Below are positions 412 to 62,609 of a stretch of 64,000 nucleotides of DNA, one piece after another (the stretch's first letter is position 1; each line of letters begins with the position of its first letter). The stretch covers positions 18,476,001-18,540,000 of the forward strand of contig NC_092344.1 of the NCBI RefSeq assembly GCF_963676685.1, read 5' to 3'. The notes below the pieces were generated by a model, which searched no databases, was not told the DNA's origin, and saw only the letters and a list, made by a program, of their open reading frames with translations. Origin of the DNA: Mytilus edulis. Taxonomy: Eukaryota. The translations under genes and the position numbers were made by a program.

Positions 412-3400
412 TTGGAGGACAACCCACCTTGAATGTAGACTTCGAAATGAAGAATACCACCAAGTATAAAGGGGAAATTGTACGTCTTCGTTGTGAGATT
501 TCTGGAAACCCGCTTCCCAAGTACAGTTGGTTCAAAGACAGCATTGAAATTGGAGATAAAGAGGATCGATTCAATGTGAAATTGACGCCATGGGGTTCAA
601 GGTAACAAATTTATGTTTTTTCTTTCAACATTGTAATTTTGATTTTAAAAAAGATTTGGTAACTGCAGATGATTGTATTCTTTCAACATTGTATTTTTGA
701 TTTTTAAAAAGATTTGGAAACAGCAGTAGATAGTAACATGAGTGATTGAAAGTATAGTTTTAAAGTAAAGGTTAAGTTTACTGTTGATGATTTAAACAAA
801 GGAGCGATGCACGAACATAAAATAAACCATTTAGTGGATTAAGATAAATACAAAAACTGTTAAAATAAACTTTTGTTAAGAGTAAGAAAATAAACCAGAT
901 GTAATATCTTCTTCAGCCTATAGTTTTAAATTAGTCAAAGTAATATGGAGTTAATACAAGGATTATATGTTTAGACGAGGGATACCTATCATCTGGTCGC
1001 AAGGAGTTATAAATCTGTTCATGTTGGCAATATTTAACATCTTTTGTATGTAAAATAAGCAACCATGTTCATAGTTTACTTTTTAGGTGTGCAGAAATGT
1101 AAACAATTTTTCGCAAGATAGGTCTTTTCATACTTGTAATTTATTTATTCATGAACTACATGCCACTGTTCAAATGGATTCAAAGCAAGCAATAATAGAT
1201 AAAAAGCTCTTCTGAAAACTTCTAATCTTAAATGTTTATAAAAAGACAAAACTAAAAGTTACAAATAAAAATCATCAAAATAAGACATTGAAAAATAAAC
1301 AACTGTTTTACATAGTTTACATTATAAGTGCTCAGAACTGTAAACAATTTAATGACAAGATGGTGGCAACTGTTCTTGTACATTTCCTGCTTGTTGTTTT
1401 TTGTATTCTTGAACTTCATGCCACTGTACAGTGATGGTTTCAAAACAAATAATAATGGTAAATAGCTATCTGAAAACAAACAAAAACTTAGCTAGGATGC
1501 TGAATTATAGAGAACAGTCATACAAGTGAGAGGTTTAGCTAGCTATAAAACCAGGTTCAATCCACCATTTTCTACATTAGAAAATGCCTGTACCAAGTCA
1601 GGAATATGACAGTTGTTATCCATTCGTTTGATGTGTTTGGACTTTTGATTTTGCCTTTTGATTTTTGATTTTCCTTTTTGAATTTTCCTCGGAGTTCAGT
1701 ATTTTTGTGTTTTTACTTTTCATTAGCAACTTATGAATTAATTTTTTTTTCAGATTAAAGATAGAGAAATCAGTACCCCATGATAGTGGTTATTATATGT
1801 GTATAGCTGCTAACAGGGCTGGGGCCAAAAATGCTACAGCTTATCTACAGATCAAAAATGGTAGGTCAAAGGGGGACAACTGTTTTATAATTTAAGTAAA
1901 TCATAAAGTTCTAAGATTTGGATTTTTATCTCCCAAACACACTGTATATTAACAAGACAGTTTACTACATGTATTCAGTACTTTCACTTTTTTCTTCTTC
2001 AGTAACTAATTTGAATTCTAGTATTTGCAAGTTTTATCCTATTGCTTTACTATTATCAAAATTAATTGGTATTTAAGATTCAGAATGCAATTTAAATTTC
2101 CATTTACAGTGCCACCACCTGCCTAATTTTAAGGTGGAGCCGTACTAAATTATTTCTTTTATCTGTTTAAAAAGCATTAAATTAACCTTTAAAAAATATC
2201 TGAATATTTAATTGTTTTCACCTGCATTCAGCTGAAAGTGTCAGAATTAGCTGAACATTTGTTTAGCTATAATGATAATAAGTTGGCCATTATAGTTCAA
2301 AGGTTATGGAGTTTTTAAATTCTTTGATATCTCAACATGCTTTAAAAAAAATCATCTAGTCTTTATTTAGAATCTTTTAATGTATAGTTTTTTTTATCCT
2401 CAAGCCACCAAATTTTACCATATCATTGTATTTATTTCTAGTTTTTATTTCTTTTCAATTTTCTTAAAAAAATTTAATTTCATATCATTTCATTACAAAT
2501 TAATGATATAAAATTAATTTTAATTTTTACCTCCCTAATATTGTATTTCCACATTTTTTCCATAGAACATCCTCCCAAAAAGGATAACAAGGGTGGAGGA
2601 TCTAAGACTGATGTGGATTCATCATTCCCAGATCTAGGTGATGATACAGATAGGTAAGTTCAGATATAACGTGGAATATTCCTTCTCTGGAATTAAAAGG
2701 TTGTTTATTTTTACATTTGCATATGACAATTTACAATTTCATATGACAAATGTATTTTATGAGCTGAACAGTATATGGATTTATTTTAACACGTGGCTCG
2801 AACTCTTTAAATTTTTCTATTGATTTAGAAAATTATTTTATAAATTCTCTATAAATTTCATTTTGAATTAAAAGAAAGTATCAATAAAAATATTTTTTAC
2901 TTATTGTTTAAGTAAATGAAGTAGTTAAGAAAGAAAGTGTATAAACTAAAGAAGCCTAAACATCTGAAAAATGGTTTAACACTATGACCAAAAAACATGT
3001 ATTAAGTTGCATTTTAAGATGGAAAATTTTCTTTAAAGATTTTCTGGGAAGTATGATCCAGAAATATATAAAAAGTAAGTAATCATTTTAATGGATTGAG
3101 GATTATCATGGCTTCTATTTACATTTTTTAATCTTTTATTAATTTTTTTCCTGACCATTAGTGGGATTTGATACATAACTGGTATATATTTTTAATTGCT
3201 AATGTTTAATTCTAATTTATGAACATATTTTTTTTTCTTTCAAATTTCAAATAAAGAGTGGGTCAGTTAGCATTGCCCAATCTTTTTGAATAAGAACATA
3301 TTAAATTCTTTGTAAATAGAAGCACATATTTAATCCCAATTCTTAATTGTATCTATATATTGTCATCCTGCTTTTGGCTATTCTGCAGCAGTCATTCAGA

Positions 3401-6400
3401 TGTTTATATAGATTTTGATGGCTTGCACTTGCCTTTTGTTAATTATCTGTGTTTCCAATAAACTTCAGTAGCTTTCCACTTCTTTAACTAATCCTATGTA
3501 AAAGGTTTCATCTTGCAGTGACTATACCTGATATATAATGTTATTAAACCTGAATAATAACTATGATCCTTGCAGTGCATAGAGCATTAAGTGCACAAAA
3601 AGAAAAAAAGGAAATTACTTTGAAATTTAACAATACATTGCAAGATGAAAATATTACAATTCTATCCATTCTTAGCTCTAATGTGAATCAATATTTTCTA
3701 TTTGTAACAAAACAGTTAGCTTCAAGCTAATGTTCATTCATTTTTCTCAAGCTTTTCCTAATAATGCTTTGCATAAAAAATTTCATGTTCTTACTCTAAA
3801 TGTAACAACTAATAAGACTATTACACAAGAGATGTTGATCTTTACAATATGCAATTAACCCATGATACTATACAGTTAACCCTTAGGCCTTACACTATAC
3901 AGTTAAACGCTACATGAGCCAACCTTTACACTAAATAGTTAACATTTGCCCAATGGAGTTAACCTTTACACTATATAGTTAACCTTTACACCATACAGTT
4001 AACCTTTACACCATACAGTTAACCTTTACACTCAACATTTTCCCTTATACTAGTTAACCTTTATGCTATACAGTTAACCTTGACACTTTATAATTAACCC
4101 TTATACTTGTTAACCCCTACACTATACAGTTTACCTTTACCTTTAAACAATCAAATTAACCTTTACACTATAGTTAACCCTTACACTACTTAACCTTTAC
4201 ACTAGACAGTTATACAGATTGAAACTAATTATGTAGCATATACATGTCATAAATATGATATTTTATATTAAAAAAAAATACAGACGAGGACCCAAGACTT
4301 CAGACAATCAGTTGCACAAATTTGTAAATTGATAGAAATGCACCATTTCAAATCTTTTTTATTTATGAATATTTCAAATGTGTAAGTTCCTTAAATTTGA
4401 CATAATTTACTGAAATACATGTATGTTGTAAATTTGTGTGCTCATATTATTTTTAAAGCATGTTGTATTTTGTGGTATTTTTTTTTAGATTTTTTAGTTT
4501 GTGTATAAATGTGTAAAGGCAAATGCTTGCTGTTATTTGGTTTTTACATAAATTATAATTAGAATAAAAATGCATTTCAAAGAAAACATGTTTCTCATTT
4601 ATGGTAGGAAAAGACATATTTTAATGGAAAATTGTCAAATAAAGGTATAAAAAATGTGATGTAAAGATATAATATTTTTATTTTTTACAGTGAACAATTG
4701 CCTTTGACTAAAAAATTACATGTAAAATAGATGTACCAATCTGTTATGTGGACAGTATTAAAAAATTGTCAATACATTATATAAAAAAGCATCTATTTTT
4801 CTAGCTGTCAAAATGATTTTATTAATGATACAAAAAAGAAAGCTATCAGATTTTCTTTATACTAACTTTAATTTTACAGATTGAAAGAGGAAAGCAGTGG
4901 TAGTACTAAAGATGACAGCAATGGTTTCTGTCAACCATTTCGAGGAAACATGTGTGCCAGATTTATAGGCAATCAGACAATTTATGTCAATTCTGAGTAT
5001 GCTCAAGGTGTAAAGGAAGAAAAATTTATTGGTATGTATGAATTTTTAATGGCCTATTCAGCAATATTTCAAAAAAGTGTGTTTGAGGGCTTGCACCCTA
5101 GAGTTTCATTCGTTATTTTAATCAATTTATGCATGCTTTTCTGGGAAAAGTAGAGGTCTTAAACTAGGAATCTCCCACCATGGTTCATCCCTTATTCATA
5201 TAATTTTGTAAACAACACTTATTTATGTTCTCCACTTTGATCAATGAAATATATGTTCCGTATTTCATTTTGAAAATTTGTAGTTTAACTACATACAAAT
5301 TTTATTGTGGACAAGGACTGATCAGAAATAGAAATTGCAGATTTTTTATTCCTCAAGTGTAATAGTATTTGACAAACATTTGAATTTAATCAAGGGACAT
5401 AACCTACAATACTATGTTCCACCAAAGACAGAAAGAGTTTCTTTATCTCAGTTAAGATTAAATGTAAGAAGCAAGTGCTCTAAAATACAGACAAATGAAG
5501 CAAGATTAATTTTACCATTAATTGGCTTAATTTTTATATCTATAGATGGATCACTTAGATAAAACGACAGTGTCAATTAAGTAAAATTTTAAGATTTCCC
5601 TGATTTGGGTTTTGGTCATGCAATGGGAAATTGGCCTATTTCCTTTTTTTCCTGCTTCATAATTTATCTAAGATACCAATCATCTTTTACATATTTAGAA
5701 ACTTTTTAGCTAATACTGTCATAATAGAATGATCAAAAGAATTTGTGTGAAAAGGGACATAATCCAGAAAATGTACCATGTAAGTAAAATATTCTTTAAT
5801 TGCTATCTTTGTAGCTGCTTTTACTGTGATTGCTGCCTCCAGTGATATGTCAGCAGAATGTCAGAAGTATGCCATAGAGTTTCTATGTTTCTACACCTTC
5901 CCTTTATGTGATCGTCAACATATCAACCCTACTCCTCGTAAAGTCTGCAGAGACGAGTGTGAAATGCTCGAGGGCACTATCTGTAAAAAGGAATATGTCA
6001 TTGGTAGACATCATCCAATGATAGGTAAGTTTGATGTTTCATTGGTTGATATCTAATTAATGGAATATGTCATTGGTAGACATCATCCAATGATAGGTAA
6101 TATTGATGTTTCATTGGTTGATATCTAATAAATGGAATATGTCATTGGTCGACATCATCCAATGATAGGTAAGTTTGATGTTTCAAAGGTTGATATCTAT
6201 TTTAAATGAAATATGATTTAAAAGTTGCTCTATGTACCGGTAATATGATTTCAATGTTAATGCCTGTTGCTTCTAATGTTTGTCCTATATACTTGTACCA
6301 CTGATATTTGGTAAATAGTGGACACTTCTTTTGATGTTCAAGTAGATAAAATACATTTTAAAATTTTGCAAATGACTTCAAACAGAATTCAAACTGTTAC

Positions 6401-9400
6401 AGTTGTAGTTATAAGGTGCAGTTTCCTGGACAGTGAAGGATTTAGATACCAAAGATCCTGAAAATAATATATATAATTGAAAACAGGGGTTGTGGTGTAT
6501 CAAGTCACCAAACAAAATCCCTACAGGCATTGGACAAAATTAAAAACAATAGAAAAACTTTATTTGCTGTTCTTCATCTTAAAGTCTTAATGAGACATAA
6601 AAAAAATGCAAAAGCACATGCATTGAACACAACTCAGAACTAGTAGCACTATTTTTATAATTTAAGTACTCTTTTTTTTAAGGGGAAGGATTCCTTCCTA
6701 AGTGCTATGACTTACCACCTAGAGGTACCCCAGAGGGAGATAAATGTAAAGGTATTAATGTACCCATTGATCCTACACAACGACCAGAAGGTAAAATTAT
6801 CTTTATGATTTACAGAAATTGAGAAATTACAAAGTCAAGCATATCCATTCAAAGATTCCTTTGTTAATTATAGAAGCTATTCAGATTGTACTGAAAGGTT
6901 TTAAAAAAAAGCTAGTTGTTGAAACCTAAATCGGTTGATTTATGTTATTTGTAAAGTACATTGTACTATTGATAATTTGAAGAACACTTAAACTAATGCA
7001 TTATAAACAATATACGGAAATTGTCATTAATAACACCACTAAAAGTTAGGTAATAGTACAATGAAAAAGCTTTATGAAATATTGGCAAATTAAAGGAGAA
7101 AACTTGTTTTATAACTTTTTATTTTTTTTAATTCTGGCTACATCTGTTAAAAGTTTCCATTCAATCAGAATTAAAATGGTAGACAATAATATCCCTAGTC
7201 AGACACTATACTTAGTGGTTATATTTTATTTTCAAACTTCTGTAATATATTATTTACAAAAGGGATTTGTAACATGATTTTATACTTTCTTTGATATCAA
7301 CACATTGTGTACATTTCAATGCTTATTTACTGATTGCTTGCTTTTTAGTTCACACATGTTATGGTGGTAATGGCATGAAGTACAAAGGATCTATCAATCA
7401 CAGTCGGTCTGGAAGGCCATGTATGAACTGGAAAAATAATCCACATTTTAAAGGCAGTGAATATCCTGATCTAGGTTAGTGATTGATAAAGAAATAAGAA
7501 AACAAACATCTATTTGTCAAATATGTTTTTTTTTTAAAAGATGAGCATCATTTTTGAATTTAACGATGACTACCAAAGCTCTGTATTGAGCAAATGTTTC
7601 TCCTGCAACTTTTGTTAGACAACTGTAAGCCTTTTAGGCATTTCGCTTCTCAGTTTCAAAATAATTATCTTTTCAAAACACTAGTTTATATTGATAAGGG
7701 ATAAATAAAGGAATCCAAAGAGCAAAAAAAATATATATCACTGTGCTTGTTTTCGAGATATTATTAGCCATTGAAATTTAGCGGGAAACTATTCTCTCTT
7801 GACTTTTCATAGCTTTATCATTGACAAGTTTAAGATCTAAAAAAACTATTAAAAAATAATTAAAAATTTTACAGATGGCTTATCATTATATATGTAAAGG
7901 ATTTACTAAAAGAAAAATGGGGGTCACTGGGCAAATTTTTTCAAGGCATTGAAATAGATGAAACCAGAGGATTCTGAAAATCTGACAAAAAATTCAAAAC
8001 ATGACAAGCCAGCTTCCTTAAGTTTGCATATGATTAAAAAATGAAAGGTTTTGTCAAATTTCAATGATACTTTCACCAAACAACATTCTAGGCGAAAGCA
8101 TGGAAAGGGTGGCATACATGATAGACAAACATCTTTATCATATGTTTATCCCTTTATCACTGTAAAAATGAGACATTAAAATCTAAATTGACAAAAAAAA
8201 GTACAGACATTAGCTTTAACTTGGGACAGACACATTAATTTATGTCTGAGTTATAAAGTTTTTGTGAGTTCAATCTTCATTTATCTGTATATTGATAAGT
8301 TAAGATCATTTCTGTTCCATTTATGATCGATATATCATACAGTGAAGCAAAACAAAGATTTTCTGTGCCCTGATAACAGGATTGCGTAACATATTTAATG
8401 ACTTTAAAATATCTTCATAGCTTGTTTGAATCATGTAAATGATTTTTTTCAAATCACACAAAAACTGGGAACTTTTTGTATTTGCATCAATAGAAAATAT
8501 AAATATGCTCATCTATTTTCATCCTTTTTTTGCTCTCATTTCAAAAAACATATGACATATGAATATTTAAAATATTTTGGTCTGATTCTTGTGACTTATT
8601 TTTATGCCCTATTTATGGACATTATTATGCCCCATTTATGGGCATTATTATGCCCCATTTCTGGGCATTATGTTTTCTGGTCTGTGCGTCCGTCCGTTCA
8701 TTCGTACGTCTGTTTGTCTGTCTGTTCATCCGTCTGTCCCTCTTCAGGTTAAAGTTTTTGGTCGAGGTAGTTTTTGATGAAGTTGAAGTCCAATCAACTT
8801 GAAACTTAGTATACATGTTCCCTATGATATGATCTTTCTAATTTTAATGCCAAATTAGAGATTTCACCAATTTTTATGGTCCACTGAACATAGAAAGTGA
8901 TAGTGCGGACGGGGCATCAGTGTACTGGGACACATTCTTGTTTATAAATGACACAAACTTAGAACTTCTTGTATTGTATAGAAAAATATGAGACTCTCAG
9001 CTTTGTTTGGATAAAAACTAAATATTTCATCCTCTCTTTATGCCCTGTCTTTGATACTTTTCTGGTCTTTGCATCTATCCAACCTATATCGGGTGCAAGA
9101 TCTGGCTTCAGGTAGTTTGTGGTTAGTTACATCAACTTAATACTTAGTACACATTTTCATTATGGAGTGACCAAATTAGGGTTTTGACCGAGATAGCACA
9201 GAGAAGTGAACATAGAAATGAGATTGTGGGAGCGGGGCATGGTGTAACATATGGGGTCAAAGGAAACATGTTCTTGTTCTTTTTATTAAGAATAATATTT
9301 AATATTATTATTTAAAAATGTTTTGTAGGAAACCATCATCTGTGTAGAAACCCGAATGGTACATATACAGGACCATGGTGCTATACTGATCCTTCATATC

Positions 9401-12066
9401 ATCATACAGAATTATGTGATATCCCTAAATGTGGTATGTATTTTTATGCCCCCAGTGTAGCTGAGGAGGTATTAAGTTTTACCCTTATCTGTCTGTTTGT
9501 CCATCAATACGTCAGGATTGGTTTCCATTCTCTAACTTAAGTTTGCCTCAACCAAATATTATGAAACTTATACATAATGTTTATTACCAAAAAACTCCAT
9601 ATCAAGTACAAAATTTGGATAGCATCACTTTTACAGGTCTTGAGTTATGTCCCTTTATAACATTACATGCAAGAGTATCATCTGTACCTCATTTATTTTA
9701 AAATAAAAAAAGTTAAAGTTTAATTTATACTTTAAAAGTTTATGGCAGGGATCATCTTGATCATTGTTCAAGACAGTCAACTATCAAGATGAATTGCTGC
9801 AATAGAAACTCTGTACTGGTTATATGTTAGTATTTCATATTGTATTCCAGATTTTTTAGATTTTATATCAAGTGGTTATCTCCCCTTGATATTGTTGGTT
9901 TTTGCTGTTTTACAATGATGAAATTAATGTGCTATCACTGAAACAATCTCCAAATTAACAGTCCTTTCCTGTAGAATAACAGACCTTTTCAGCAGCAAAT
10001 ACATAATAAATATGACTCGCATTCATAAATCCATTTTTCTTACAACAAACTTTTAATATCATCAATGTATGTATTATACTTGCCAAAGAGAAAAGATAAT
10101 AGAAATGTTTGCCTTCATTATTATTGCAATTGTTGAAAAAAAATTGAGCTGAAATTAAAATGTGAGATAGGTGATAGCGATTTAAAAAAATGCAGTATTG
10201 AAAATATCCTATCAAAATACAAAAGTGAGTTATTTTTGTGACTCCTTTCTTGTAACTTTTGAATAAATGATGAAGTAAAAAAAACCTTGCAAAAATTTCT
10301 GAATTAACAGTAATAAATTTGAAAAAAACATTTTATATCTTGATAGATAACAGCATGTTATATTTCAATCAACCATATTTTTTTTTCACTCCTTTTCAGT
10401 TGGTGCTGGTCCCGGTCAAGGAGCTATTGGAGCAGAACCAGTGAACAAATTAATGTATTTAGTACCAGGAATAATTGTACCACTAGCTTTGATAATCTTA
10501 CTTGCCATTGCATGTTTGTGTCAGAGACATAAAAAACAAAAAGATGCTGGTGTCAAAACTAAAGTTGACCAGCCGGCCACTAACATGGAAACTGTTCCAC
10601 TGAAGTCAGCCATGAACGTAAGAGACTTTCCGATATCTTCTATCCGGTTCCTACAGGAATTAGGTGAAGGTCAGTTTGGGAAAGTGTTTAAAGGAGAAGT
10701 GCTTGGTCTCTATGGTGATAATATGATTTCTAAAGTAGCCATTAAAACTTTGAAGGAGAATTCTTTACCCAAAGTTAAGAACGATTTCCGTCGTGAAGTT
10801 GACCTGATGTCTGAACTTAGACATGGAAACATTGTGTGTTTACTTGGTGTTTGTATGAAACAAGAACCTATGTGTATGTTATTTGAATACATGCAACTAG
10901 GTGACTTGCATGAATACCTTGTTACTCATTCACCTAATTCAGATGTTGGGTTATCCAATGAATCGGAAGGTTTAAAACATGCGTTAGAATACGGTGACTT
11001 ATTACACATTGCTACACAAATCGTTGCTGGCATGGAATACTTGTCAAGCCATCATTATGTACACAGAGACTTAGCCGCCAGAAATATACTTGTTGGTGAC
11101 AATATGTGTGTTAAAATCTCAGATTTTGGTCTATCTAGAGATATATATTCACAAGACTATTACAGAGTTCAAAGTAAATCCATACTTCCTGTAAGATGGA
11201 TGCCACCGGAGGCCATTTTGTACGGAAAATTCACCACAGAAACAGATATCTGGTCTTTTGGTGTTGTCATGTGGGAAATATTCAGCTTCGGTTTACAGCC
11301 ATACTATGGTTATTCTAATCCAGAAGTTATTGAAGTTGTAAGAGCTCGGCAAATCTTGCCTTCACCAGAGGAGTGTCCAACAAGAGTATATGGTCTTATG
11401 GTTGAATGTTGGCATGAAGTACCCAACAGGAGACCCACTTTTAGAGAAATACATGCACGTCTTCGAGCATGGAAGACGGAAGTATTAATGTTAAATCCCC
11501 ACTGGAGCTTAAGTCAGAGTCATTCAGCACATTCAGGCAGTACACATCAGAGTTCTCAAAGTGGACCTAGCCATCATAGTAGCACTGGTCCAAGTAATAC
11601 AACAGCACTGACTGGGCTGACAGGAAGTAGTGGCGGATCAGACCCATCATCAACAATGTCACATCCAGGAATGATAGGCCATCCGGGAATGGTCCATCCA
11701 GGAATGGGCCAACCCCCACCAAATTACCAGGATTCAACACGTGTTCATTATTATCCTAACTTAGGTCCGCAACAAATGCAACAGTACCCTGGTCAAGGTC
11801 CTATATTAATGCAAAGAGGACCTCCACCCAATCAGATGCCTAACCATAATGGACCTTCAAAATTATCGCCAGCTGGCTCAATAGCTAGTAGTAAACAATC
11901 ATCTAGTAGTGGTGCTTCATCCAATTATAAACCTAATGTCTCAAACTGTAATACTTTAACTGGACCAGCTACAATAGACGTGTCTGAGTGTCAAAAGTTT
12001 TCAAATTTAATGTCACAGAATAGTTACATTCCAGAACAAAGGACGGTAGATTATAACGAGTGTTAG
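412..12066 (+). CDS. ROR: ROR family receptor tyrosine kinase (Ig - Frizzled CRD - kringle - TM - kinase - Ser/Thr/Pro-rich tail), 5' partial
   Basis: Phase-consistent GT-AG exons: 412-601, 1754-1860, 2566-2653, 4880-5031, 5815-6024, 6683-6790, 7349-7474, 9329-9433, 10400-12066. Domains seen: Ig ([17 protein letters not shown]...DSGYYMC), CRD ([16 protein letters not shown]...CFYTFPLC...[10 protein letters not shown]), kringle ([11 protein letters not shown]...CRNPNG..GPWCYT...CDIPKC), TM ([17 protein letters not shown]), kinase ([27 protein letters not shown]). Signal-peptide exon(s) lie upstream of the window. Confidence 0.96.
1520..1722 (+). mobile_element. Fragment of a dispersed SINE-like repeat (cctgtaccaagtcagga family)
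   Basis: Shares the cc(c/a)aagtcagga core with 26870-26950 and, inverted, ~63735-63780. Confidence 0.5.
3850..4215. repeat. Degenerate ~20-bp minisatellite (tacagttaacctttacacta) in a ROR intron
   Basis: Many tandem, partly diverged copies of gttaacctttacac. Confidence 0.85.
5990..6200 (+). repeat. Three tandem ~72-bp copies spanning a ROR exon end and its splice donor
   Basis: ggaatatgtcattggtagacatcatccaatgatag|gtaa...ttgatatcta repeated at ~5990, ~6062 and ~6134. Confidence 0.9.
8599..8943 (+). mobile_element. Non-autonomous Helentron-type element (HINE / bivalve pearl-like), family A
   Basis: T-rich ends, 5' short palindrome (tgccccatttatgggca, here triplicated), (GTCY)n-like microsatellite tract, conserved body. 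Related copies at 9037-9278 (+, degenerate), 25782-26079 (-) and 54553-54836 (-). Confidence 0.75.
9441..9690 (+). mobile_element. Helentron-type non-autonomous element, family B
   Basis: Starts tttttatgcccc, has a tctgtctg tract and the body tttgcctcaaccaaat. An inverted relative with duplicated core lies at ~50490-51452. Confidence 0.6.
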
Positions 12067-14973: not shown

Positions 14974-15034
14974 TTTCATAAAACATTACATACTGTGTTT
15001 GTTTACTGTCCACAACCCTTTAGCCATAAGGTAT

Positions 15035-18000
15035 ATATAAGATCTGTTTGAGATCGTCATGAGAAGTCAATATCGCAAACCCCCTATATTCTGTGAGGTT
15101 GTCACAGATAGTCAATATCTTAAACACCCGGTTCTTTGTAAGATCATCATGGATAGTCAACATCTTAAATTTCATGTTCTGTGTGAAATTGTCGTGGATA
15201 GTCAATATCGCAATCACCCTATTCTGTGTGAGATCGTCATGGATAGTCAATACCTTCAACACCCTTCTCTGTGTGAGATCCTATAAAAGAGTAATCACAA
15301 TTACAGCGGATTCCATTGAGTGTGTAGCGAAAGGTATTATCTTTGGTTTAAGCTTGCTTGTTAGCTGAACCGTGAAGTCATTATTAGGTCAGGTATACTA
15401 CCCTCCTTTCGAAGTAGCATAGTCCAACAGACAAATAGATTAGTTTTCTGTCGGACTAGTCTATTCTTAAAGTAGGGTAGTTTACCTAACCTTACAATGA
15501 ATTCACGATTCAGCTAACAAGCAAGCTAACCAGACATTACCTTTGGCTACACATTTAATGGAATCCGCTGTAATAGTTCTTTAACGTGCAGAGAGTATGA
15601 TGACACTCTACAAACAAAAAAAGAGGCACTAATCTTTAAATTTAAGAATTCAGACTGTTTTTAAAAGATTATGCTATATACTGGCTTCAATCTATTGTCA
15701 TTGATGGTTTATATCTTAAACCCTCTGTTCTGTGTTAAATCGTCATGGATAGTCAATATCTCAATTATTCTGTTCTATGTGAGATCGTCATGGATAGTCA
15801 ATATCTCAATCACCCTGTTCTGTGTGAGATCGTCATAGATAGTCAATATCTTAAACACCCTGTTTTGTGTGAGATTGTCATGGATAGTCAATATCTTAAT
15901 CACCATGGTCTGTGTGATAGCCATGAGTTGTCAATATCTTGAACACCTATTTCTGTTTGAGTTCGTCATGGATAGTCAATATCTTGAACATCCTGTTCTG
16001 TGTGAGATCGTCATAAATAGTCAATATCTTAAACCCCTAGTATTATGTAAGATCAACATGGATAGTCAATATCCTAAACACCCTGTTCTACTTGAGATCT
16101 TCATGGATAGTCAATATCTTGAACATCCTGTTCTGTGTGAGATCACTAAGAGTAGTCAATAACTTGAACCCCCTGTTATGTGTGAGATCGTCATGAGTAG
16201 TCAATTTCTTAAAAACCCTGTATTGTGTGATATCATCAATAGTCAATATCTTGAACACCTGTATTGTGTAAGATCATCATGGATAGTAAATATCTTAAAC
16301 ACCTGATCTATGTGAGATCGTGATGAGTATTCAATATCTCAATATTTCTGTGTGAGAACGTCACGAGTAGCCAATTACTCAACCACCCTAGTTGGTCTGC
16401 GGTCGTCATGAGTAGTCAGTATCTCAAACATCATGAATTGTGTGAGATTGCCATGAGTAGTCAATATCTTAAAACCCCTGTTCTGTGTGAAATCGTCACT
16501 GTTAGCCATGATTTGAAAAACCCTGTTCTGTGTGAAATTGTCATGAGTAGTCAATATCTTAAACTCCCTGTTGTGTTTGAGATCGTCATAAGTAGTCAAT
16601 ATCTTAAACACCCTGTTCTGTATGATATCGTCATGGATAGTCGATATCTCAAACCACCTGTTCTGTGTGAGATATGAAAAGTCAAATTCTTGAATATGTT
16701 GTTCTGTGTGAGATTGTCATGGGTAGTCAATATCTTAAACTCCCTGTTGTGTGTAAACTTATAATGAAAAGTCAATTTCTTGATTATCCTGTTCTGTGTA
16801 AGGTCGTTGTGAGAAGTCAATATCTTAAACTGCCTGTTGTCTGCAATATTGTCAGAAGTAGTTAGGATCTCAAACATCCTGTTATGTGTCAAATCGTCAT
16901 AAGTAGTAACTATCTTAAACACACTATTCTGTGCGAGTTTGGTATGGATAGTCAATATCTGAAACACCCTGTTCTGTGTGAGATCGTCATGGATAGTCAA
17001 TATCTTAAACCCCCTGTTCTGTGTGGGATAATCATGGATAGTCAATATCTTAAACCCCCTGTTCTGTGTGGGATAATCATGGATAGTCAATATCTTAAAC
17101 CCCCTGTTCTGTGTGGGATAATCATGGATAGTCAATATTTTAAACCCCCTGTTCTGTGTGGGATAATCATGGATAGTCAATATCTTAAACCCCCTGTTAT
17201 GTGTGTGATAATCATGGGTAGTCAATATATCGAATACCCTGTTATGTGTGAGATCGTCATGGATAGTCAATATTTCAATCACCCTGTTCTGTGTGAGATC
17301 GTCATGGATAGTCAATATCTCAATCACCCTGTTCTGTGTGAGATCGTCATGGATAGTCAATATCTCAATCACCCTGTTCTGTGTGAGATCGTCATGGATA
17401 GTCAATATTTCAATCACCCTGTTCTGTGTGAGATCGTCATGGATAGTCAATATTTCAATCACCCTGTTCTGTGTGAGATCGTCATGGATAGTCAATATCT
17501 CAATCACCCTGTTCTGTGTGAGATCGTCATGGATAGTCAATATTTCAATCACCCTGTTCTGTGTGAGATCTTCATGGATAGTCAATATCTTGAACATCCT
17601 GTTCTGTGTGAGATCGTCATAAATAGTCAATATCTTAAACCCCTAGTATTATGTAAGATCAACATGGATAGTCAATATCCTAAACACCCTGTTCTACTTG
17701 AGATCTTCATGGATAGTCAATATCTTGAACATCCTGTTCTGTGTGAGATCACTAAGAGTAGTCAATAACTTGAACCCCCTGTTATGTGTGAGATCGTCAT
17801 GAGTAGTCAATTTCTTAAAAACCCTGTATTGTGTGATATCATCAATAGTCAATATCTTGAACACCTGTATTGTGTAAGATCATCATGGATAGTAAATATC
17901 TTAAACACCTGATCTATGTGAGATCGTGATGAGTATTCAATATCTCAATATTTCTGTGTGAGAACGTCACGAGTAGCCAATTACTCAACCACCCTAGTTG

Positions 18001-19560
18001 GTCTGCGGTCGTCATGAGTAGTCAGTATCTCAAACATCATGAATTGTGTGAGATTGCCATGAGTAGTCAATATCTTAAAACCCCTGTTCTGTGTGAAATC
18101 GTCACTGTTAGCCATGATTTGAAAAACCCTGTTCTGTGTGAAATTGTCATGAGTAGTCAATATCTTAAACTCCCTGTTGTGTTTGAGATCGTCATAAGTA
18201 GTCAATATCTTAAACACCCTGTTCTGTATGATATCGTCATGGATAGTCGATATCTCAAACCACCTGTTCTGTGTGAGATATGAAAAGTCAAATTCTTGAA
18301 TATGTTGTTCTGTGTGAGATTGTCATGGGTAGTCAATATCTTAAACTCCCTGTTGTGTGTAAACTTATAATGAAAAGTCAATTTCTTGATTATCCTGTTC
18401 TGTGTAAGGTCGTTGTGAGAAGTCAATATCTTAAACTGCCTGTTGTCTGCAATATTGTCAGAAGTAGTTAGGATCTCAAACATCCTGTTATGTGTCAAAT
18501 CGTCATAAGTAGTAACTATCTTAAACACACTATTCTGTGCGAGTTTGGTATGGATAGTCAATATCTGAAACACCCTGTTCTGTGTGAGATCGTCATGGAT
18601 AGTCAATATCTTAAACCCCCTGTTCTGTGTGGGATAATCATGGATAGTCAATATCTTAAACCCCCTGTTCTGTGTGGGATAATCATGGATAGTCAATATC
18701 TTAAACCCCCTGTTCTGTGTGGGATAATCATGGATAGTCAATATTTTAAACCCCCTGTTCTGTGTGGGATAATCATGGATAGTCAATATCTTAAACCCCC
18801 TGTTATGTGTGTGATAATCATGGGTAGTCAATATATCGAATACCCTGTTATGTGTGAGATCGTCATGGATAGTCAATATTTCAATCACCCTGTTCTGTGT
18901 GAGATCGTCATGGATAGTCAATATTTCAATCACCCTGTTCTGTGTGAGATCGTCATGGATAGTCAATATCTCAATCACCCTGTTCTGTGTGAGATCGTCA
19001 TGGATAGTCAATATCTCAATCACCCTGTTCTGTGTGAGATCGTCATGGATAGTCAATATTTCAATCACCCTGTTCTGTGTGAGATCGTCATGGATAGTCA
19101 ATATTTCAATCACCCTGTTCTGTGTGAGATCGTCATGGATAGTCAATATCTCAATCACCCTGTTCTGTGTGAGATCGTCATGGATAGTCAATATTTCAAT
19201 CACCCTGTTCTGTGTGAGATCGTCATGGATAGTCAATATTTCAATCACCCTGTTCTGTGTGAGATCGTCATGGATATATCTAAAACATTCTGTTCTGTGT
19301 GAGATCGTCATTGATAATCAATATTTTAAACCTTCAGTTCTAAGATCTTCATTATGAGTCAATATCTTGAACACCCCTGTAGTAGTAATGTTCTGTGTAA
19401 GATCTTCATTTGTAGTCAAAATCTTGAACATGTACCATATATGAGGTTGGCATGGATACCGTAGTCAATTTCTTGAACAACCCTGTTATAATAATTTTCT
19501 ATGTTAGATCTTCATTGGTAGTCAATATCTTGAACATATACCCTTTAAGAGACATTCTCA
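15035..19560. repeat. 45-bp tandem satellite containing a 1606-bp higher-order duplication
   Basis: Unit tgtgtgagatcgtcatggatagtcaatatctcaatcaccctgttc. Block ~15966-17571 recurs from 17572 (identical ORF translations offset by 1606). Degenerate units continue to ~19770 and at 20310-20440. Interrupted at 15281-15690. Confidence 0.95.
15304..15570. mobile_element. Near-palindromic 267-bp MITE (copy 1)
   Basis: TA|cagcggattccatt...aatggaatccgctg|TA, with arms pairing almost to the centre. Other copies at ~21351-21575 and 53335-53601. Confidence 0.85.
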
Positions 19561-45900: not shown

Positions 45901-48900
45901 ATAAATTGAAAAGCCAAAATAATCATTGATGAGAGATTTAACCAATAGAATTAAGGTGAGCGATTCAGGCTCTTGAGAGCCTCTTGTTTTCTGAAATGAA
46001 ACTTACATTTTAAAATTAAAACAAAATATTACATTTTTGGGGGATATCACACCATGAAAGTGGAAGTTACATTTTTTGTACTATGGAAGTGGTGCAGGAT
46101 AGTAAAATCAGAAAACAGAAAGTAGAGAAAAGTGGTTTTGAATTGTTTATCTTTGTGTCATGAGGTACCTTTTTTTCAAATAAATCACAATTTCACAGAC
46201 CAACAGTGTTTGCATATTTAAGATTAAGATTTGCTTGATACAGGCTTTTGTCCTTATATAAAATCTACTAAAAAAATAACTTGATTTTTTGTCCAGGAAA
46301 CTGTTTATATACAAAGTTATATTTTCAAAGCTTGAAAGCATTGCCGTTATTCAAGATATATAAAGTCAGAAACAAGAATACTTGTCCCAAGTAAATTGAG
46401 GGTTTCCATGAATTATGTTTAACAATTCGAGTACAGGAGACCATTAAAAAAATGTTTAGCATTATTATTTTTGATTTCAGTATTAGAGATAATTAAAGAG
46501 AGTACAGTTTTACAGAAAGTACATTTAGGTCTACCACAGGAAGAAATCGAAGAACAAATGAAAAGACAAATAGAAGAGTAAGAATAACTGACTTTTATTC
46601 TGGGGAAAAAATTAATAGTTAATTTTGAGCTTTCAGTTACTGCAAGTTCTTGAAGGTCCTTAGGCTTAAATTAAAATATTGTTTGTTTGCCCTTTACCGA
46701 CCTACCCTATAAATTAGTTCCAACTGAAAATCTTTTATTTGTATTTACCAGCAATATTTTTTTTTTTATTTCCTACCGAAAATCTTATATTTGTATTTCC
46801 TGTTCAATTTTTTTTTACCAGAATCCTTGGGTTTTATCATCCCTGTATATACTTGAAGAGCAGGGTTCATTTAAAAAAGTTCGTCCAATACAAAATTATC
46901 AACATGTACAAAATATTTTGTTAACGGACATCGTACCCTATGTAGGGATGGCCTTTGGTGATGCGTATATCAGGATGATTATGTTAACGCTGCCTTCTAC
47001 CAGCTTTGACATTTTATTTATATCTGACATGAACCAAAGTCCTGTAAATTGGAGGATAATTGGCAGTAAAATCGCCAAGTTTTCCTTACAGACCATTTAT
47101 AAATGCGATGTAAGATACGTGACATTTGAGTTTCAAGTCTTTTAGATTTTTATTGATAAAACCGGGACACACGAAATTTTTTAAACACTCAAGTCTCTAG
47201 GGTTGTAAGTAAAGTAAGACAAATGCTTAGATGATGATGGAGGGAAATGCACTGCCAGGCAGTGGCTTTATATCAATTCTTGTCAAATATTCTTTTTATT
47301 TCACAGATATCATCTCTGATAATTTCAGATAAAATTTTGATAAAATTTAAAGAATGTCGGAATAAAACATGCTGTAGATTGCACATTGTACAGCTGTTTC
47401 ACAAACCATGCTTGGGAGATATATGATATTAATAAACCCTTCAGTTGAGTTAAACGTACAAGGTACATGTACGTAGTACAGAATACCAGTGCAAATTACA
47501 ACTCTTAAAAGTTCCAGGCATATAAACGTTGAAAATTTGTTGAAGCCCTATATTTTGATAATTTTAAAAAACAAAATAATAGTGCATAAAAATTAACTTC
47601 ACATTCTACATGATATTTTTTTTTCATAACTTCCTGGGACTATTATACTATTAATAGTCCAAGAAACTTTAATAATAGTAAAGATCAGTAAAATCATACT
47701 TAAAACAAAAGCAAATACAGACAAAAATGATATCATGCAGATTTTTTATCTATAAAATAAAATATTATACCTACCTGCCTAACCATGACAAAAAATGTAC
47801 CGAGCCAAGTTATTTTTTGGGAAAGAAATATAACATATTTTACCTACCTACCTACCCTGTCTCAAAAAATAGGGTCGGAAAAGGGCAAACAAACAATATT
47901 TCAATTTAGGCCTTTTATAATGTCATTTAGGAGATATATGTATTGTATTTTAAGTTCCGACAGCATAATTTTTTTTGTGATTTGATTTTCGGAAATTAAA
48001 TTTACTGGTGACGTGTTAGCAGAGACAGTATGTATTCGCGACCATCAAATCACCAATTGATGCTCTCGGAGCTTAAAATACAACAAATATTAGAAAGGAT
48101 GTTGCATTACAATTGTCATTTTATAAATTGTAACAATGTTTCAAGTTTCAAAGATATGTATGAAGTTGTGATATGAATTAGGTGCATGTACTTTGAATGT
48201 CACATCAGATTATAAACTTTTGATCCCTAATAAAGACAATTGACATGTTTCTAACATGGTTATAACCAAGAATATTAGTGAGCACATTGCTACAAGTTCT
48301 TTTTATTTTATATGTTTTCAGACATTCTGCACTGATGTATGGTAATTTTAAAACCAGGCCTAATGAAGAGGATGAAAAAGCTGCCAAATTAGCAAGATTA
48401 AGTAGAATGAAGAAAATATATCTTCCTCCCAGATTATCACCAAGTAAGAACAATCTTACCACTCAAAAAAGAAGAGACAATGTATAAATCTTTAAATTAT
48501 ACCCCACTTAAAAAAAGAGGGGAGGAATATACTGTTTTACCTCTTCATCCCTCCATCTTTCAGTCTGTCAGTCCCATTAATATTTTCTGAAATTTGATTT
48601 CAGGGTTTATATGAGTCAGCTTTACTGTGTGATGCGTTTTCAGATTCATCACTCAACAACTTCCTGTTTACCTTATACTTTAAGCAGGGACAGTGTATCA
48701 TTTATATAATAGTGAGCAGTAGATCAGATTCACTTGTTTAAACTTGTTTTGTTGCATTTTCACTTGAATAAACAAGACTTTCGTGTTGTGGATAGCTGCA
48801 TGTATTATGAAATATGCCTCATTAAATGAAATTCTATTTGATTTGATAAATTATTGTTGGACTATTTTAGATTAATGTTATCATCAGTGGTTAAAATCTG

Positions 48901-49093
48901 ATATAGTTCATAAAAAGTTGATGTTTGAATTTTTATTGTTTCAATAAAAAATTGACCTTATGACCTTTGATATCTTACAGCACCATCAACAGCTCCACCT
49001 CCAACAGGCCACAGAGATGAACCCTGGGAAAATGAAGTTGAAGATCTGGTCACATGGTCTTCTAAACTAGATACTGCTGCTCTTGATGAATAA
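39980..49093 (+). CDS. UBE2U: Ubiquitin-conjugating enzyme E2 U-like, complete CDS
   Basis: Phase-consistent exons: 39980-40045, 40351-40435, 40788-40880, 41342-41439, 41706-41832, 42643-42831, 46481-46577, 48322-48443, 48981-49093. N-terminus MFSRAHLLIERE; catalytic region TIPFHPNVDMITGRPCIDFLD; LSNPNLDSPVNPEA; UBE2U-type extension SFDDYHTTWSGIATSK; C-terminal WENEVEDLVTWSSKL. An acceptor at 39967 implies an upstream non-coding exon. Confidence 0.92.
43503..44074. mobile_element. Kolobok-like non-autonomous DNA transposon
   Basis: TTAA|agtcataagaaac ... gtttcttatgact|TTAA (13-bp TIRs, TTAA target-site duplication, AG/CT ends). Confidence 0.75.
44106..45990 (+). mobile_element. Helentron-type non-autonomous element carrying ~3.3 tandem ~500-bp units
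   Basis: 5' tttttagctcacctgtcccaaagggacaagtgagct, then a (gtc)n tract; units start at 44203, 44699, 45200 and 45698; 3' subTIR aggtgagc and hairpin aggctcttgagagcct followed by cttgtttt. Confidence 0.88.
46662..47913. mobile_element. ~1.25-kb non-autonomous TIR transposon (PIF/Harbinger-like ends)
   Basis: ~50-bp TIRs aggcttaaattaaaatattgtttgtttgccctttaccgacctaccctat / atagggtcggaaaagggcaaacaaacaatatttcaatttaggcct. Confidence 0.75.
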
Positions 49094-53601: not shown

Positions 53602-53982
53602 TAATTTTATGTGAAGCACAAGCTTCCAGTGAAAAATCAACCAAGTCAAACAATGTGATTTCAAATATCTTGATATTGTCAAGTCAAATGCGATGGAATT
53701 ACAATAAATAATTTCCATCCTAATAATCTGCTATTTAGTATAGAACTTCACAATGTTTTTATCACTCTCTATCTCTTTCTTGTACAAGGCCTAAAAATAC
53801 AATTCAACAATAAAAAACTCATTTTATATAAAAATGTTGTTTTTCATGCTTCCTCCCTCTTGATAACATTGTCAGACTTTTCTTGGTAGAGCTCTATATA
53901 ATTATAATCATTTGTATTTGGTTGAAGTGAAGGTCACACAATGATTCCAATATGAGATTAAAGCTTTGACTATCACTAGATA

Positions 53983-62004
<8,022 letters not shown>

Positions 62005-62312
62005 ATTGGACAACTAGTTTCTATTTTTTCACTTATTTTCGGATTTTACGAAACTTCCGGCTGTTTTGTGTATTGCTGTAGCTTTACATATTAGCATGCA
62101 AGATTGGTGATGACAAAAAAAGCGATACACTCCAATACACTTTATTGATATTTTGCATTATGCTAGGGAATTTAGTGCTGTTTAGTTATGGATATGAAAC
62201 TTAAGTGAATTTTCCAAAGGACGAGTGTAATAAGAATCTGTTTGGATTTCAGAAATGTTGACAGATGACCATTCAAATAGTCTGTTGAAAGGTCAACAAG
62301 ATCTTTTTCAAC
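62005..62312. promoter_or_regulatory. Bidirectional promoter region between FDX2 and CACHD1
   Basis: 308 bp separate the divergent ATGs. ETS-type acttccgg at 62053-62060; YY1/Kozak-like aacatggcg over the CACHD1 ATG. Confidence 0.65.
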
Positions 62313-62609
62313 ATGGCGACCTGTAATCAAAATAGAATTTTAGTTTGTCTTTGTATTTTTATAACAGCCAATTTGACGTTTGTCAGATCTGATAGTACTA
62401 AAAAACGTGATGTGTACAATTATAATGATAAACTTGAACAGGAGGCTTTCAAAGCACTATTCTCTGCTGGTGGATATTTCTCTGACACAAGGCAAGAACC
62501 AGTTGACCCTAAAATTTTAGGTGGAATAAGAATTCAGATAGAAGCTTTGAAGTTGTGGTCTCAATTAAGACAAACAGCAAATGTTGAATTAGGGATTCCG
62601 CAAATGCAG
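62313..62609 (+). CDS. CACHD1: First coding exon of a VWFA and cache domain-containing protein 1 (CACHD1-like); gene continues beyond the window
   Basis: Signal peptide (ILVCLCIFITANLTFVRS). Exon ends EALKLWSQLRQTANVELGIPQMQ|gtagg, which resembles the CACHD1 N-terminal EAxxLAxQMRRLAxEELGVxxMQ segment as recalled. Neighbourhood with ROR and UBE2U supports the call. Confidence 0.72.

What the first reader, a model, noticed from the sequence alone, without database searches (positions are those of the whole stretch)
412..62609. ROR-ZGLP1-UBE2U-FDX2-CACHD1: an apparently ancestral gene block interleaving two human paralogous regions
Seen: five consecutive genes, ROR(+), ZGLP1(-), UBE2U(+), FDX2(-), CACHD1(+). 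Established (from memory of the human annotation): ROR1, UBE2U and CACHD1 are consecutive and co-oriented on 1p31, followed by RAVER2 and JAK1. ZGLP1 and FDX2 are adjacent and co-oriented on 19p13 with FDX2 upstream, next to RAVER1 and close to TYK2. RAVER1/2 and JAK1/TYK2 mark the two regions as paralogous. Here the three + genes reproduce the 1p31 order and the two - genes reproduce the 19p13 order and relative orientation. Inference: this is the single-copy block of the protostome-deuterostome ancestor, split in vertebrates by whole-genome duplication and reciprocal, strand-sorted gene loss. Such long retention suggests shared regulation, for example ROR or ZGLP1 enhancers embedded in neighbouring genes or paired promoters.
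Basis: partly seen in the sequence, partly recalled or inferred. Interest (0 to 1): 0.9.

Follow-up and report, generated by a model that had tools for sequence, protein, structure and literature searches.

The report
Mussel gene block mirrors two human regions
Five neighbouring mussel genes (ROR, ZGLP1, UBE2U, FDX2, CACHD1) sit interleaved in the order expected if one ancestral block was later split between human 1p31 and 19p13, a clean example of a known pattern rather than a new kind of biology.

Summary
The window is Mytilus chromosome-scale contig C1, 18.476-18.540 Mb. It carries ROR(+), ZGLP1(-), UBE2U(+), FDX2(-) and the start of CACHD1(+), on alternating strands. Each identity was checked exon by exon. 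All named ZGLP1 hits are ZGLP1. The UBE2U core exon hits only human UBE2U among solved structures. FDX2 exons hit human FDX2 best. CACHD1 exons hit only CACHD1.

RNA reads confirm the FDX2 introns. They also place the 5' ends of FDX2 and CACHD1 about 50-75 bp apart, so the two genes share a bidirectional promoter.

Papers confirm the human orders PGM1-ROR1-UBE2U-CACHD1-RAVER2-JAK1 and ZGLP1-FDX2-RAVER1-TYK2, and the 2R paralogy of JAK1/TYK2 with the RAVER genes. In the snail Batillaria, ZGLP1 and ROR carry consecutive locus tags.

An ancestral single-copy block followed by reciprocal loss is therefore the best reading. The predicted RAVER and JAK genes are not within about 160 kb downstream of CACHD1, where tetraspanin genes lie instead. 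Sorting by strand has a 1-in-16 chance.

This is a new member of a known kind (doubly conserved microsynteny). An earlier scan note on this same window (s1-838130) covers the ZGLP1-UBE2U pair.

The parts
408..12066 (+). ROR receptor tyrosine kinase, exons 2 to last. Exons: Ig 408-611 and 1752-1859; linker about 2564-2651; Fz/CRD 4887-5066 and 5808-6029; 6682-6789; kringle 7348-7476 and 9325-9432; TM, kinase and tail 10405-12066. Exon 1 (signal peptide) lies upstream of the window.
   Evidence: Pfam gives PK_Tyr at E 7.4e-98 and Fz at 1.8e-9. tblastn of P0001 (947 aa, Ig-Fz-Kringle-kinase) is collinear from residue 30 to 947. Named hits are ROR or ROR1-like. The linker exon was aligned.
15697..19331 (.). 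45-bp minisatellite of about 82 copies in the tail-to-tail spacer between ROR and ZGLP1.
   Evidence: Tandem Repeats Finder, score 3649. It explains the long repeat ORFs seen.
25195..29745 (-). ZGLP1 (GATA-type zinc finger protein 1), 182 aa. Four coding exons: 29745-29554, 28313-about 28180, 26386-26294 (GATA finger), and 25326-25198 plus the stop.
   Evidence: P0189 'ZGLP1 [Mytilus edulis]' aligns at about 100% over all four exons. Pfam GATA at E 6.8e-13. All named hits are ZGLP1. Three exons are collinear with gar, mole-rat, spider and Nematostella ZGLP1.
38275..39507 (+). Retroelement fragment (reverse transcriptase) in the 10.2-kb head-to-head spacer between ZGLP1 and UBE2U.
   Evidence: Pfam RVT_1 at E 5.8e-13.
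39980..49093 (+). UBE2U-like E2. Exon 1 is 39980-40045 (ATG, GT donor). UBC core exons are 40351-40440, about 40784-40879 (HPN), about 41335-41445 (catalytic Cys) and about 41706-41840. C-terminal extension exons are about 42699-42848 and 48971-49090, with the stop at 49091.
   Evidence: In the PDB, exon 41284-41454 hits only 1YRV (human UBE2U) at E 3.5e-8. Exon 40781-40891 has 1YRV as its top hit. Pfam UQ_con. Splice sites were read. It is single copy in the genome.
53983..62011 (-). FDX2 (mitochondrial ferredoxin 2). Exon 1 is 61846-62011 or more (ATG at 62004). Then 60416-60468, 59078-59185, 58403-58490 (Cys cluster), about 55573-55632, and the last exon about 53986-54105.
   Evidence: RNA joints with GT..AG on the - strand at 58490/59078, 59185/60416 and 60468/61846, plus a 1275-nt spliced contig. 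PDB top hits are human FDX2 2Y5C and 8RMC, at E 2e-7 and 3.7e-14, against adrenodoxin at 3e-5. The C-x5-C-x2-C motif was found.
62012..62064 (.). Shared bidirectional promoter core between the FDX2 and CACHD1 5' ends.
   Evidence: The FDX2 mRNA contig reaches 62011. The CACHD1 mRNA contig starts at 62065. Stranded read ends cluster at 62062 and 62086.
62065..62609 (+). CACHD1 exon 1: 5' UTR, ATG at 62313, signal peptide and N-terminal helix. The gene continues off-window to about C1:18,581,159 (about 43 kb in all).
   Evidence: A 3795-nt RNA contig covers 62065-62609, with a CAG|GT donor. Exon 1 is bridged to CACHD1 by the transcript fragment P0134, which hits 8S7C at E 9e-22 from the exon-1 helix onward. 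Downstream exon L004:9147-9416 hits only 8S7C at E 1.7e-12. The TM and tail exons were seen.

Best explanation
This is a conserved, ancient microsyntenic block. [quoted passage not shown]

The vertebrate whole-genome duplications copied the block. One copy (human 1p31.3) kept ROR1, UBE2U and CACHD1. Its sister (19p13.2) kept ZGLP1 and FDX2. The mussel locus therefore reads as an interleaving of the two human regions, which is doubly conserved synteny with reciprocal gene loss.

In the unduplicated genome, part of the linkage is probably held by promoter sharing. FDX2 and CACHD1 are transcribed divergently from 5' ends only about 50-75 bp apart (shown here). A breakpoint there would damage both genes (inferred). 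After duplication each copy could lose one partner by decay without any breakpoint, as Irimia et al. 2012 proposed for co-regulated pairs.

Steps shown: gene identities, order, strands, the shared promoter, and ROR-ZGLP1 adjacency in a gastropod. Steps inferred: the ancestral state, and selection as the cause of retention.
For: - Gene identities.
- UBE2U is single copy in the genome.
- Alternating strands and exon coordinates.
- Human orders from papers: PGM1 ROR1 UBE2U CACHD1 (PMC5618647); ROR1 CACHD1 RAVER2 JAK1 across vertebrates (PMC4422726); ZGLP1, FDX2, RAVER1, ICAM3 and TYK2 at 19p13.2 (PMC8731227).
- JAK1/TYK2 arose by 2R, with RAVER paralogues beside each (PMC3296744).
- FDX2 lies upstream of ZGLP1 on one strand in a mammal, shown by read-through protein P0161.
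- In Batillaria attramentaria, ZGLP1-like is BaRGS_00013701/KAK7495061.1 and ROR is BaRGS_00013702/KAK7495062.1, on the same 1.88-Mb scaffold.
- ROR and ZGLP1 are on the same chromosome in Pinctada imbricata and Liolophura sinensis.
- Bidirectional FDX2-CACHD1 promoter from RNA.
- Looser linkage fits too. A PGM-family gene lies 1.17 Mb away on C1, and PGM1 flanks ROR1 in human. The only PDE4 gene is also on C1.
- Reciprocal loss of co-regulated pairs after duplication is an explicit published scenario (PMC3514665).
Against: - RAVER and JAK flank the block in both human paralogons, but they were not found within about 160 kb downstream of CACHD1. Exon-level scans also found none on C1 between 15.9 and 32.5 Mb. 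The upstream side of ROR could not be read.
- Only one extra adjacency (ROR-ZGLP1, in a gastropod) supports conservation outside this genome, and that is still within molluscs.
- Capitella has ROR and ZGLP1 on different scaffolds. The spider Uloborus has them on different chromosomes.
- One UBE2U exon (41706-41840) matches another E2 better than 1YRV.
- Vertebrates have broken both head-to-head pairs, so promoter sharing cannot be an absolute constraint.
- The human gene strands on 1p31 are from memory.
Confidence: 0.7

Rival explanations
1. Secondary interleaving. The bilaterian ancestor had two separate small blocks, ROR-UBE2U-CACHD1 and FDX2-ZGLP1, perhaps on one chromosome. They became interdigitated only in the molluscan or bivalve lineage through local rearrangements.
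For: Nothing outside molluscs was shown to have the interleaved order. RAVER and JAK do not continue the block here. ROR and ZGLP1 are unlinked at scaffold or chromosome level in Capitella and Uloborus.
Against: This needs at least two insertions that happen to preserve the order and orientation of both blocks. It also needs them to fall exactly between genes whose human orthologues lie in sister paralogons. The gastropod adjacency of ROR and ZGLP1 pushes the interleaving back at least to the bivalve-gastropod ancestor.
Confidence: 0.15
2. The block is ancestral, but its survival is neutral. It would be a passive remnant in slowly rearranging genomes, with no shared regulation. The close FDX2-CACHD1 promoters would be incidental.
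For: Both head-to-head pairs were separated in vertebrates without obvious harm. The ZGLP1-UBE2U spacer is 10.2 kb and tolerates a retroelement. The ROR-ZGLP1 spacer tolerates a 3.6-kb minisatellite. Linkage is lost in a spider and possibly in an annelid.
Against: A 5'-5' arrangement with a spacer under 1 kb is the published signature of constrained, co-regulated ancient pairs (PMC3514665). The FDX2 and CACHD1 5' ends are about 50-75 bp apart. Five consecutive genes kept over more than 500 My is more than typical neutral decay leaves.
Confidence: 0.3
3. The resemblance is an artefact of loose orthology calls. The E2 and/or the GATA gene would be lineage-specific relatives rather than true UBE2U and ZGLP1 orthologues, so the match to two human regions would be partly coincidental.
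For: Every exon-level search used a short query. One UBC exon prefers a different E2. No gene trees were built. The C-terminal UBE2U motifs were recognised from memory only.
Against: ZGLP1 is supported over three collinear exons by vertebrate, arthropod and cnidarian ZGLP1 proteins, and it is already annotated ZGLP1 in Mytilus. The catalytic-loop exon of the E2 hits only human UBE2U among all solved E2s. ROR, FDX2 and CACHD1 are unambiguous.
Confidence: 0.05

Closest known systems
Doubly conserved synteny, meaning interleaved sister regions after whole-genome duplication. From my own knowledge: Kellis 2004 for yeast, Jaillon 2004 for Tetraodon, Putnam 2008 for amphioxus versus human.
   Same: One unduplicated region maps alternately onto two paralogous regions of a duplicated genome. 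Each gene is kept in only one of the two regions, and order is preserved.
   Different: Here the outgroup is a mollusc rather than a close pre-duplication relative. The block has only five genes. The flanking ohnologue pairs that define the paralogons (RAVER, JAK) are not part of the mussel block.
Conserved ancient microsyntenic pairs (CAMPs) and genomic regulatory blocks (Irimia et al. 2012, PMC3514665; Touceda-Suarez et al. 2020, PMC7530604).
   Same: Ancient linkage of unrelated genes. There is a 5'-5' pair with a spacer under 1 kb (FDX2-CACHD1). Developmental genes (ROR, CACHD1, ZGLP1) sit next to housekeeping 'bystanders' (FDX2, UBE2U). Duplicates were dismantled after 2R by reciprocal loss, exactly as those papers propose.
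   Different: I could not check whether this block is in their lists, because no supplements are held. No enhancer, conserved non-coding element or co-expression evidence was obtained here. In vertebrates the head-to-head partners ended on different chromosomes.
Bilaterian ancestral linkage groups (Simakov et al. 2022, PMC8809688).
   Same: Chromosome-scale co-location is expected for these genes. PDE4 and a PGM gene lie on the same mussel chromosome.
   Different: Linkage groups preserve chromosome membership, not order. This block preserves order and orientation at the 100-kb scale.

Membership tests
ROR receptor tyrosine kinases | Ig, Frizzled-type CRD and Kringle ectodomain, followed by a TM segment and a tyrosine-kinase domain. 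| tested here: met
   Pfam Fz and PK_Tyr match window exons. All exons are collinear with P0001, which carries I-set, Fz, Kringle and PK_Tyr.
ZGLP1 (GATA-type zinc finger protein 1) | A single GATA-type finger of the LWRDAEDGTPLCNACGIRYKKY type, followed by a second CxxC...CxxC module at the C-terminus and preceded by a DPxF(K/R)G motif. | tested here: met
   Three collinear exon matches to ZGLP1 of gar, mole-rat, spider, scallop and Nematostella. Identity to the annotated Mytilus edulis ZGLP1 is about 100%. No GATA1-6 protein appears among the named hits.
UBE2U | A UBC core with the HPN motif and catalytic Cys, closest to UBE2U among all E2 families. | tested here: met
   HPN lies in exon 40781-40891 and the Cys in exon 41284-41454. 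Exon 41284-41454 hits only 1YRV, at E 3.5e-8. For exon 40781-40891, 1YRV is the top of 223 E2 hits. Exon 41706-41840 does not discriminate. No gene tree was built.
UBE2U | A long C-terminal extension beyond the UBC fold, with conserved motifs. | tested here: inconclusive
   Coding exons continue to 49093. The resemblance of two motifs to the human UBE2U tail is from memory only. The solved structure lacks the tail, and the atlas search gave nothing.
FDX2 (mitochondrial ferredoxin 2, adrenodoxin-like) | The [2Fe-2S] Cys-x5-Cys-x2-Cys cluster motif, and an FDX2-type C-terminus rather than the FDX1/adrenodoxin type. | tested here: met
   The motif was found. For the last exon, human FDX2 scores E 3.7e-14 against adrenodoxin at 3.1e-5. 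Exon 3 hits FDX2 and no FDX1 chain at E <= 1; one other iron-sulfur cluster binding protein (2mj3) scores weakly, E 0.25.
CACHD1 | An alpha2delta-like ectodomain (VWA-N, VWA, cache), a single TM segment and a cytoplasmic tail, closest to CACHD1 and not to CACNA2D. | tested here: met
   Off-window exons and the bridging fragment P0134 hit only 8S7C (CACHD1) in the PDB, with no alpha2delta chain. The TM and tail exons were seen. Pfam VWA_N did not ring at this locus in the exon-wise genome scan.
Doubly conserved synteny block with reciprocal ohnologue loss | Each outgroup gene has its orthologue in exactly one of two regions, and order is collinear in both. | tested here: met
   Human orders come from papers and from P0161. 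ROR2 on a third paralogon is from my own knowledge.
Doubly conserved synteny block with reciprocal ohnologue loss | The two regions are shown independently to be sister paralogons. | tested here: met
   Literature only: JAK1/TYK2 and RAVER2/RAVER1 (PMC3296744). Other pairs (PDE4B/A, ATG4C/D, KANK4/2) are from my own knowledge.
Doubly conserved synteny block with reciprocal ohnologue loss | The same linkage occurs in further unduplicated lineages. | tested here: inconclusive
   ROR-ZGLP1 adjacency was seen in one gastropod. The two genes share a chromosome in a pearl oyster and a chiton.
Co-regulated ancient gene pair (bidirectional promoter type) | 5'-5' orientation with an intergenic distance under 1 kb. 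| tested here: met
   The FDX2 and CACHD1 transcript 5' ends lie at 62011 or beyond and about 62065.
Co-regulated ancient gene pair (bidirectional promoter type) | The pair itself is conserved across phyla and is co-expressed. | tested here: not met
   In human the partners are on different chromosomes. Other phyla and co-expression were not tested. In the four runs laid, FDX2 and CACHD1 were not covered by the same runs.

The most novel reading that the evidence does not exclude
The alternating-strand block is a pan-bilaterian, possibly eumetazoan, regulatory unit. Same-strand genes would be functionally coupled, for example by transcriptional read-through, as FDX2 into ZGLP1 still shows in mammals. 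Head-to-head genes would share promoters. After 2R the unit would have been resolved strand by strand rather than gene by gene, which would explain why all + genes went to one paralogon and all - genes to the other.
Probability: 0.1. Interest if true: 0.65.

Novelty: new member of a known kind. Interest (0 to 1): 0.4.

Why it matters
This is an unusually tidy, five-gene illustration that a mollusc locus can reconstruct the pre-duplication state of two human regions. It dates UBE2U and ZGLP1, both often treated as vertebrate germline genes, to at least the bilaterian ancestor. It also gives a concrete, testable case of a bidirectional promoter pair (FDX2-CACHD1) that was split by reciprocal loss after whole-genome duplication. 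It does not change the current understanding of genome evolution, since hundreds of ancient microsyntenic blocks are known.

Tried and rejected
- The JAK-specific Pfam models (Jak1_Phl, FERM_F2, SH2_1, FERM_F1) rang nowhere in the genome. This is uninformative and does not show absence.
- Pfam VWA_N found other loci on C1 and C12 but not this CACHD1.
- CACHD1 exon 1 alone hits nothing in the PDB or Pfam. It was resolved only through the representative search and fragment P0134.
- The motif scan and ROR-based tblastn found no kinase or RNP-1 motif downstream.
- Pfam on the 150 best-scoring ORFs after CACHD1 gave only Tetraspanin, Promethin and DUF6594.
- CDC37_N gave only a weak hit with stops on C10.
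- The ESM Atlas search of the UBE2U tail exon gave nothing.
- Cluster look-ups of the CACHD1 exon-1 fragments gave no names.
- Pinctada accession and locus-tag numbers disagree with each other, so only 'same chromosome' is claimed.
- Papers: no article mentions this block. The supplements of the two microsynteny papers are not held.
Every search was exon by exon, by reference.

Full report
**Where the window is.** The window is G000:C1:18,476,001-18,540,000 of a 1.37-Gb assembly with 14 chromosome-scale pieces and about 31% G+C. The annotated protein 'ZGLP1 [Mytilus edulis]' (P0189, CAG2207500.1) matches four window exons at about 100%. Identical or near-identical entries exist for M. galloprovincialis, M. 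trossulus and M. californianus. The genome is therefore a Mytilus of the edulis group or a very close relative.

**ROR.** tblastn of a 947-aa ROR (P0001, with Pfam I-set, Fz, Kringle and PK_Tyr) is collinear from residue 30 at 408-611 to the stop at 12066. One more exon lies at about 2564-2651. Pfam on window exons gives PK_Tyr at E 7.4e-98 and Fz at 1.8e-9. Named relatives are ROR or ROR1-like from molluscs, annelids, arthropods and amphioxus. The signal-peptide exon lies upstream of the window.

**ZGLP1.**
- The gene has four coding exons on the minus strand: 29745-29554, 28313-about 28180, 26386-26294 and 25326-25198.
- Every named hit of the GATA exon is 'GATA-type zinc finger protein 1' or ZGLP1.
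- Three exons are collinear with ZGLP1 proteins from gar, a mole-rat, spiders, scallop, unionids and Nematostella. These exons carry the N-terminal DPxF(K/R)G motif, the GATA finger and the C-terminal second CxxC module.
- ZGLP1 therefore predates Bilateria and is already annotated in bivalves, for example the Pinctada margaritifera mRNA AJF48836.1.

**UBE2U.**
- Exon 1 is at 39980-40045, with an ATG and a TGG|GTATGT donor. UBC-core exons follow at 40351, 40781, 41284 and 41706. Further coding exons at about 42699-42848 and 48971-49090 end at a TAA at 49091.
- Among all solved structures, the exon with the catalytic cysteine hits only 1YRV, human UBE2U, at E 3.5e-8.
- The HPN exon has 1YRV as the best of 223 E2 hits.
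- The following helix exon does not discriminate.
- The exon is single copy in the genome.
- Two tail motifs look like the human UBE2U tail, but that is from my memory and was not verified.

**FDX2.**
- RNA reads and a spliced 1275-nt contig give GT..AG introns on the minus strand at 58490/59078, 59185/60416 and 60468/61846. The 5' end is at or beyond 62011.
- Human FDX2 is the top solved relative for exon 3, at E 2e-7 with no FDX1 hit.
- For the last exon, FDX2 scores 3.7e-14 against 3.1e-5 for adrenodoxin.

**CACHD1.**
- Exon 1 (ATG at 62313) has no direct database match.
- An exhaustive HMMER search found 22 short relatives. One of them, the 232-aa transcript fragment P0134, runs on from the exon-1 helix into sequence that hits only CACHD1 structure 8S7C, at E 9e-22.
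- P0134 also finds exons 2-4 at 9.5-12.2 kb beyond the window end.
- An off-window VWA exon (L004:9147-9416) hits only 8S7C, at E 1.7e-12.
- TM and tail exons end the gene at about C1:18,581,159.
- An RNA contig covers 62065-62609, and the donor is CAG|GTAGGC.

**Anatomy of the block.**
- The strands alternate + - + - +.
- ROR and ZGLP1 are tail to tail, 13 kb apart, with a 45-bp by about 82-copy minisatellite between them.
- ZGLP1 and UBE2U are head to head, 10.2 kb between their ATGs, with a reverse-transcriptase fragment between them.
- UBE2U and FDX2 are tail to tail, about 4.9 kb apart.
- FDX2 and CACHD1 are head to head, with transcript 5' ends about 50-75 bp apart. That is a genuine bidirectional promoter.

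**Comparison with human.**
- Papers give the order PGM1, ROR1, UBE2U, CACHD1 (PMC5618647).
- They give ROR1, CACHD1, RAVER2, JAK1 conserved across vertebrates (PMC4422726).
- They place MRPL4, ZGLP1, FDX2, RAVER1, ICAM3 and TYK2 at 19p13.2 (PMC8731227).
- JAK1 and TYK2 are 2R sisters, each with a RAVER neighbour (PMC3296744).
- A squirrel protein named 'ferredoxin-2 isoform X8' (P0161) is the FDX2 N-terminus fused to the ZGLP1 C-terminus. FDX2 therefore lies upstream of ZGLP1 on one strand in mammals, as it does in the mussel.
- The three plus-strand mussel genes thus reproduce the 1p31 order, and the two minus-strand genes reproduce the 19p13 order. With several thousand shared gene families, this cannot be coincidence.

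**Other species.**
- In the gastropod Batillaria attramentaria, ZGLP1-like (BaRGS_00013701, KAK7495061.1) and ROR (BaRGS_00013702, KAK7495062.1) are consecutive on one 1.88-Mb scaffold.
- In Pinctada imbricata and the chiton Liolophura sinensis, the two genes share a chromosome.
- In Capitella they are on different scaffolds, and in the spider Uloborus on different chromosomes.

**The RAVER/JAK prediction.**
- I read 200 kb beyond the window. After CACHD1 come two or three unassigned genes, three tetraspanin genes and a promethin-like ORF.
- No RRM, kinase, FERM or SH2 match appears among the 150 best-scoring ORFs. No kinase or RNP-1 motif is present either.
- Genome-wide exon scans with PK_Tyr and RRM_1 show no hit on C1 between 15.9 and 32.5 Mb apart from ROR. 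Only part of the candidates were scored.
- The upstream flank could not be fetched.
- So the prediction is not met downstream, and it is unresolved upstream.
- Looser linkage does survive. A PGM-family gene sits 1.17 Mb away (roughly a 0.5% chance for three loci), and the only PDE4 gene is on the same chromosome.

**Interpretation.**
- The simplest history is an ancestral single-copy block that was duplicated in vertebrates and thinned reciprocally. This is the classical doubly-conserved-synteny pattern.
- Irimia et al. 2012 explicitly foresee reciprocal loss of co-regulated pairs after duplication.
- The strand sorting is equivalent to alternate retention. It has probability 2/32 under random retention between two copies, so it carries little weight.
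- The bidirectional FDX2-CACHD1 promoter gives a concrete reason why a breakpoint there would be selected against in an unduplicated genome. But vertebrates separated both head-to-head pairs, so the coupling is dispensable once a spare copy exists.
- Neutral persistence remains a serious rival for the cause of retention.

**Novelty.** No paper mentioning this block was found. The supplements of the microsynteny surveys are not held. The gene annotations themselves are already public for Mytilus. I rate this a new member of a known kind, of moderate interest.

**Method notes.** All searches were made exon by exon, by reference.

Noticed in passing
window 63495-63971: A roughly 476-bp interspersed repeat in CACHD1 intron 1. 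At least 40 copies at 96-98% identity are spread over all chromosomes. It is very abundant in RNA reads on both strands, at depth 200-570.
   Followed up: partly
window 58597-58656: A 60-nt segment inside an FDX2 intron has RNA depth of 330-390, while its flanks are near zero. Reads run on into unlike sequence on both sides with one consistent consensus. It is therefore a piece of an abundant transcript or repeat encoded elsewhere.
   Followed up: no
window 15697-19331 (also 15043-15280): A 45-bp minisatellite of about 82 copies. It contains a higher-order duplication of about 1.6 kb, shown by identical ORFs at 16375-16611 and 17981-18217.
   Followed up: partly
window 28687-28941: An imperfect (GAAATCGA)n array in ZGLP1 intron 1. 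It gives long spurious ORFs on both strands.
   Followed up: no
G000:C1:112,062,565-112,108,518 (-): A second very strong single-exon ROR-like kinase domain (E 9e-90) has RRM exons about 45 kb away on the same strand. This may be a ROR-family paralogue next to an RRM gene, and it is a lead for RAVER.
   Followed up: no
G000:C14:29,328,182-29,341,109 (+): Two tyrosine-kinase-like domains lie in tandem within 13 kb. This is a JAK-like architecture and a candidate JAK gene on another chromosome. The JAK-specific Pfam models gave no significant hit there.
   Followed up: partly
G000:C1:44,213,031-44,230,434 (-) and C3:19,693,085-19,698,987, 19,808,268-19,810,574 (-): Tandem arrays of near-identical kinase-domain ORFs. 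The C1 array has ten units spaced 1,868 bp apart, all with the same score.
   Followed up: no
G000:C1:19,705,631-19,707,270 (-) and C1:118,289,927-118,307,900 (+): A phosphoglucomutase-family gene lies 1.17 Mb from the block, and the only PDE4 gene is on the same chromosome. Human PGM1 flanks ROR1, and PDE4B and PDE4A lie in the two paralogons.
   Followed up: partly
L011, L017-L018, L022 (C1:18.62-18.74 Mb, - strand): A cluster of three tetraspanin genes lies downstream of CACHD1. A 185-aa single-exon ORF with no Pfam match sits at L009:1146-1700.
   Followed up: partly
P0161 (Ictidomys tridecemlineatus): The RefSeq model 'ferredoxin-2, mitochondrial isoform X8' is an FDX2-ZGLP1 read-through fusion: the FDX2 N-terminus joined to the ZGLP1 zinc fingers.
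   Followed up: partly
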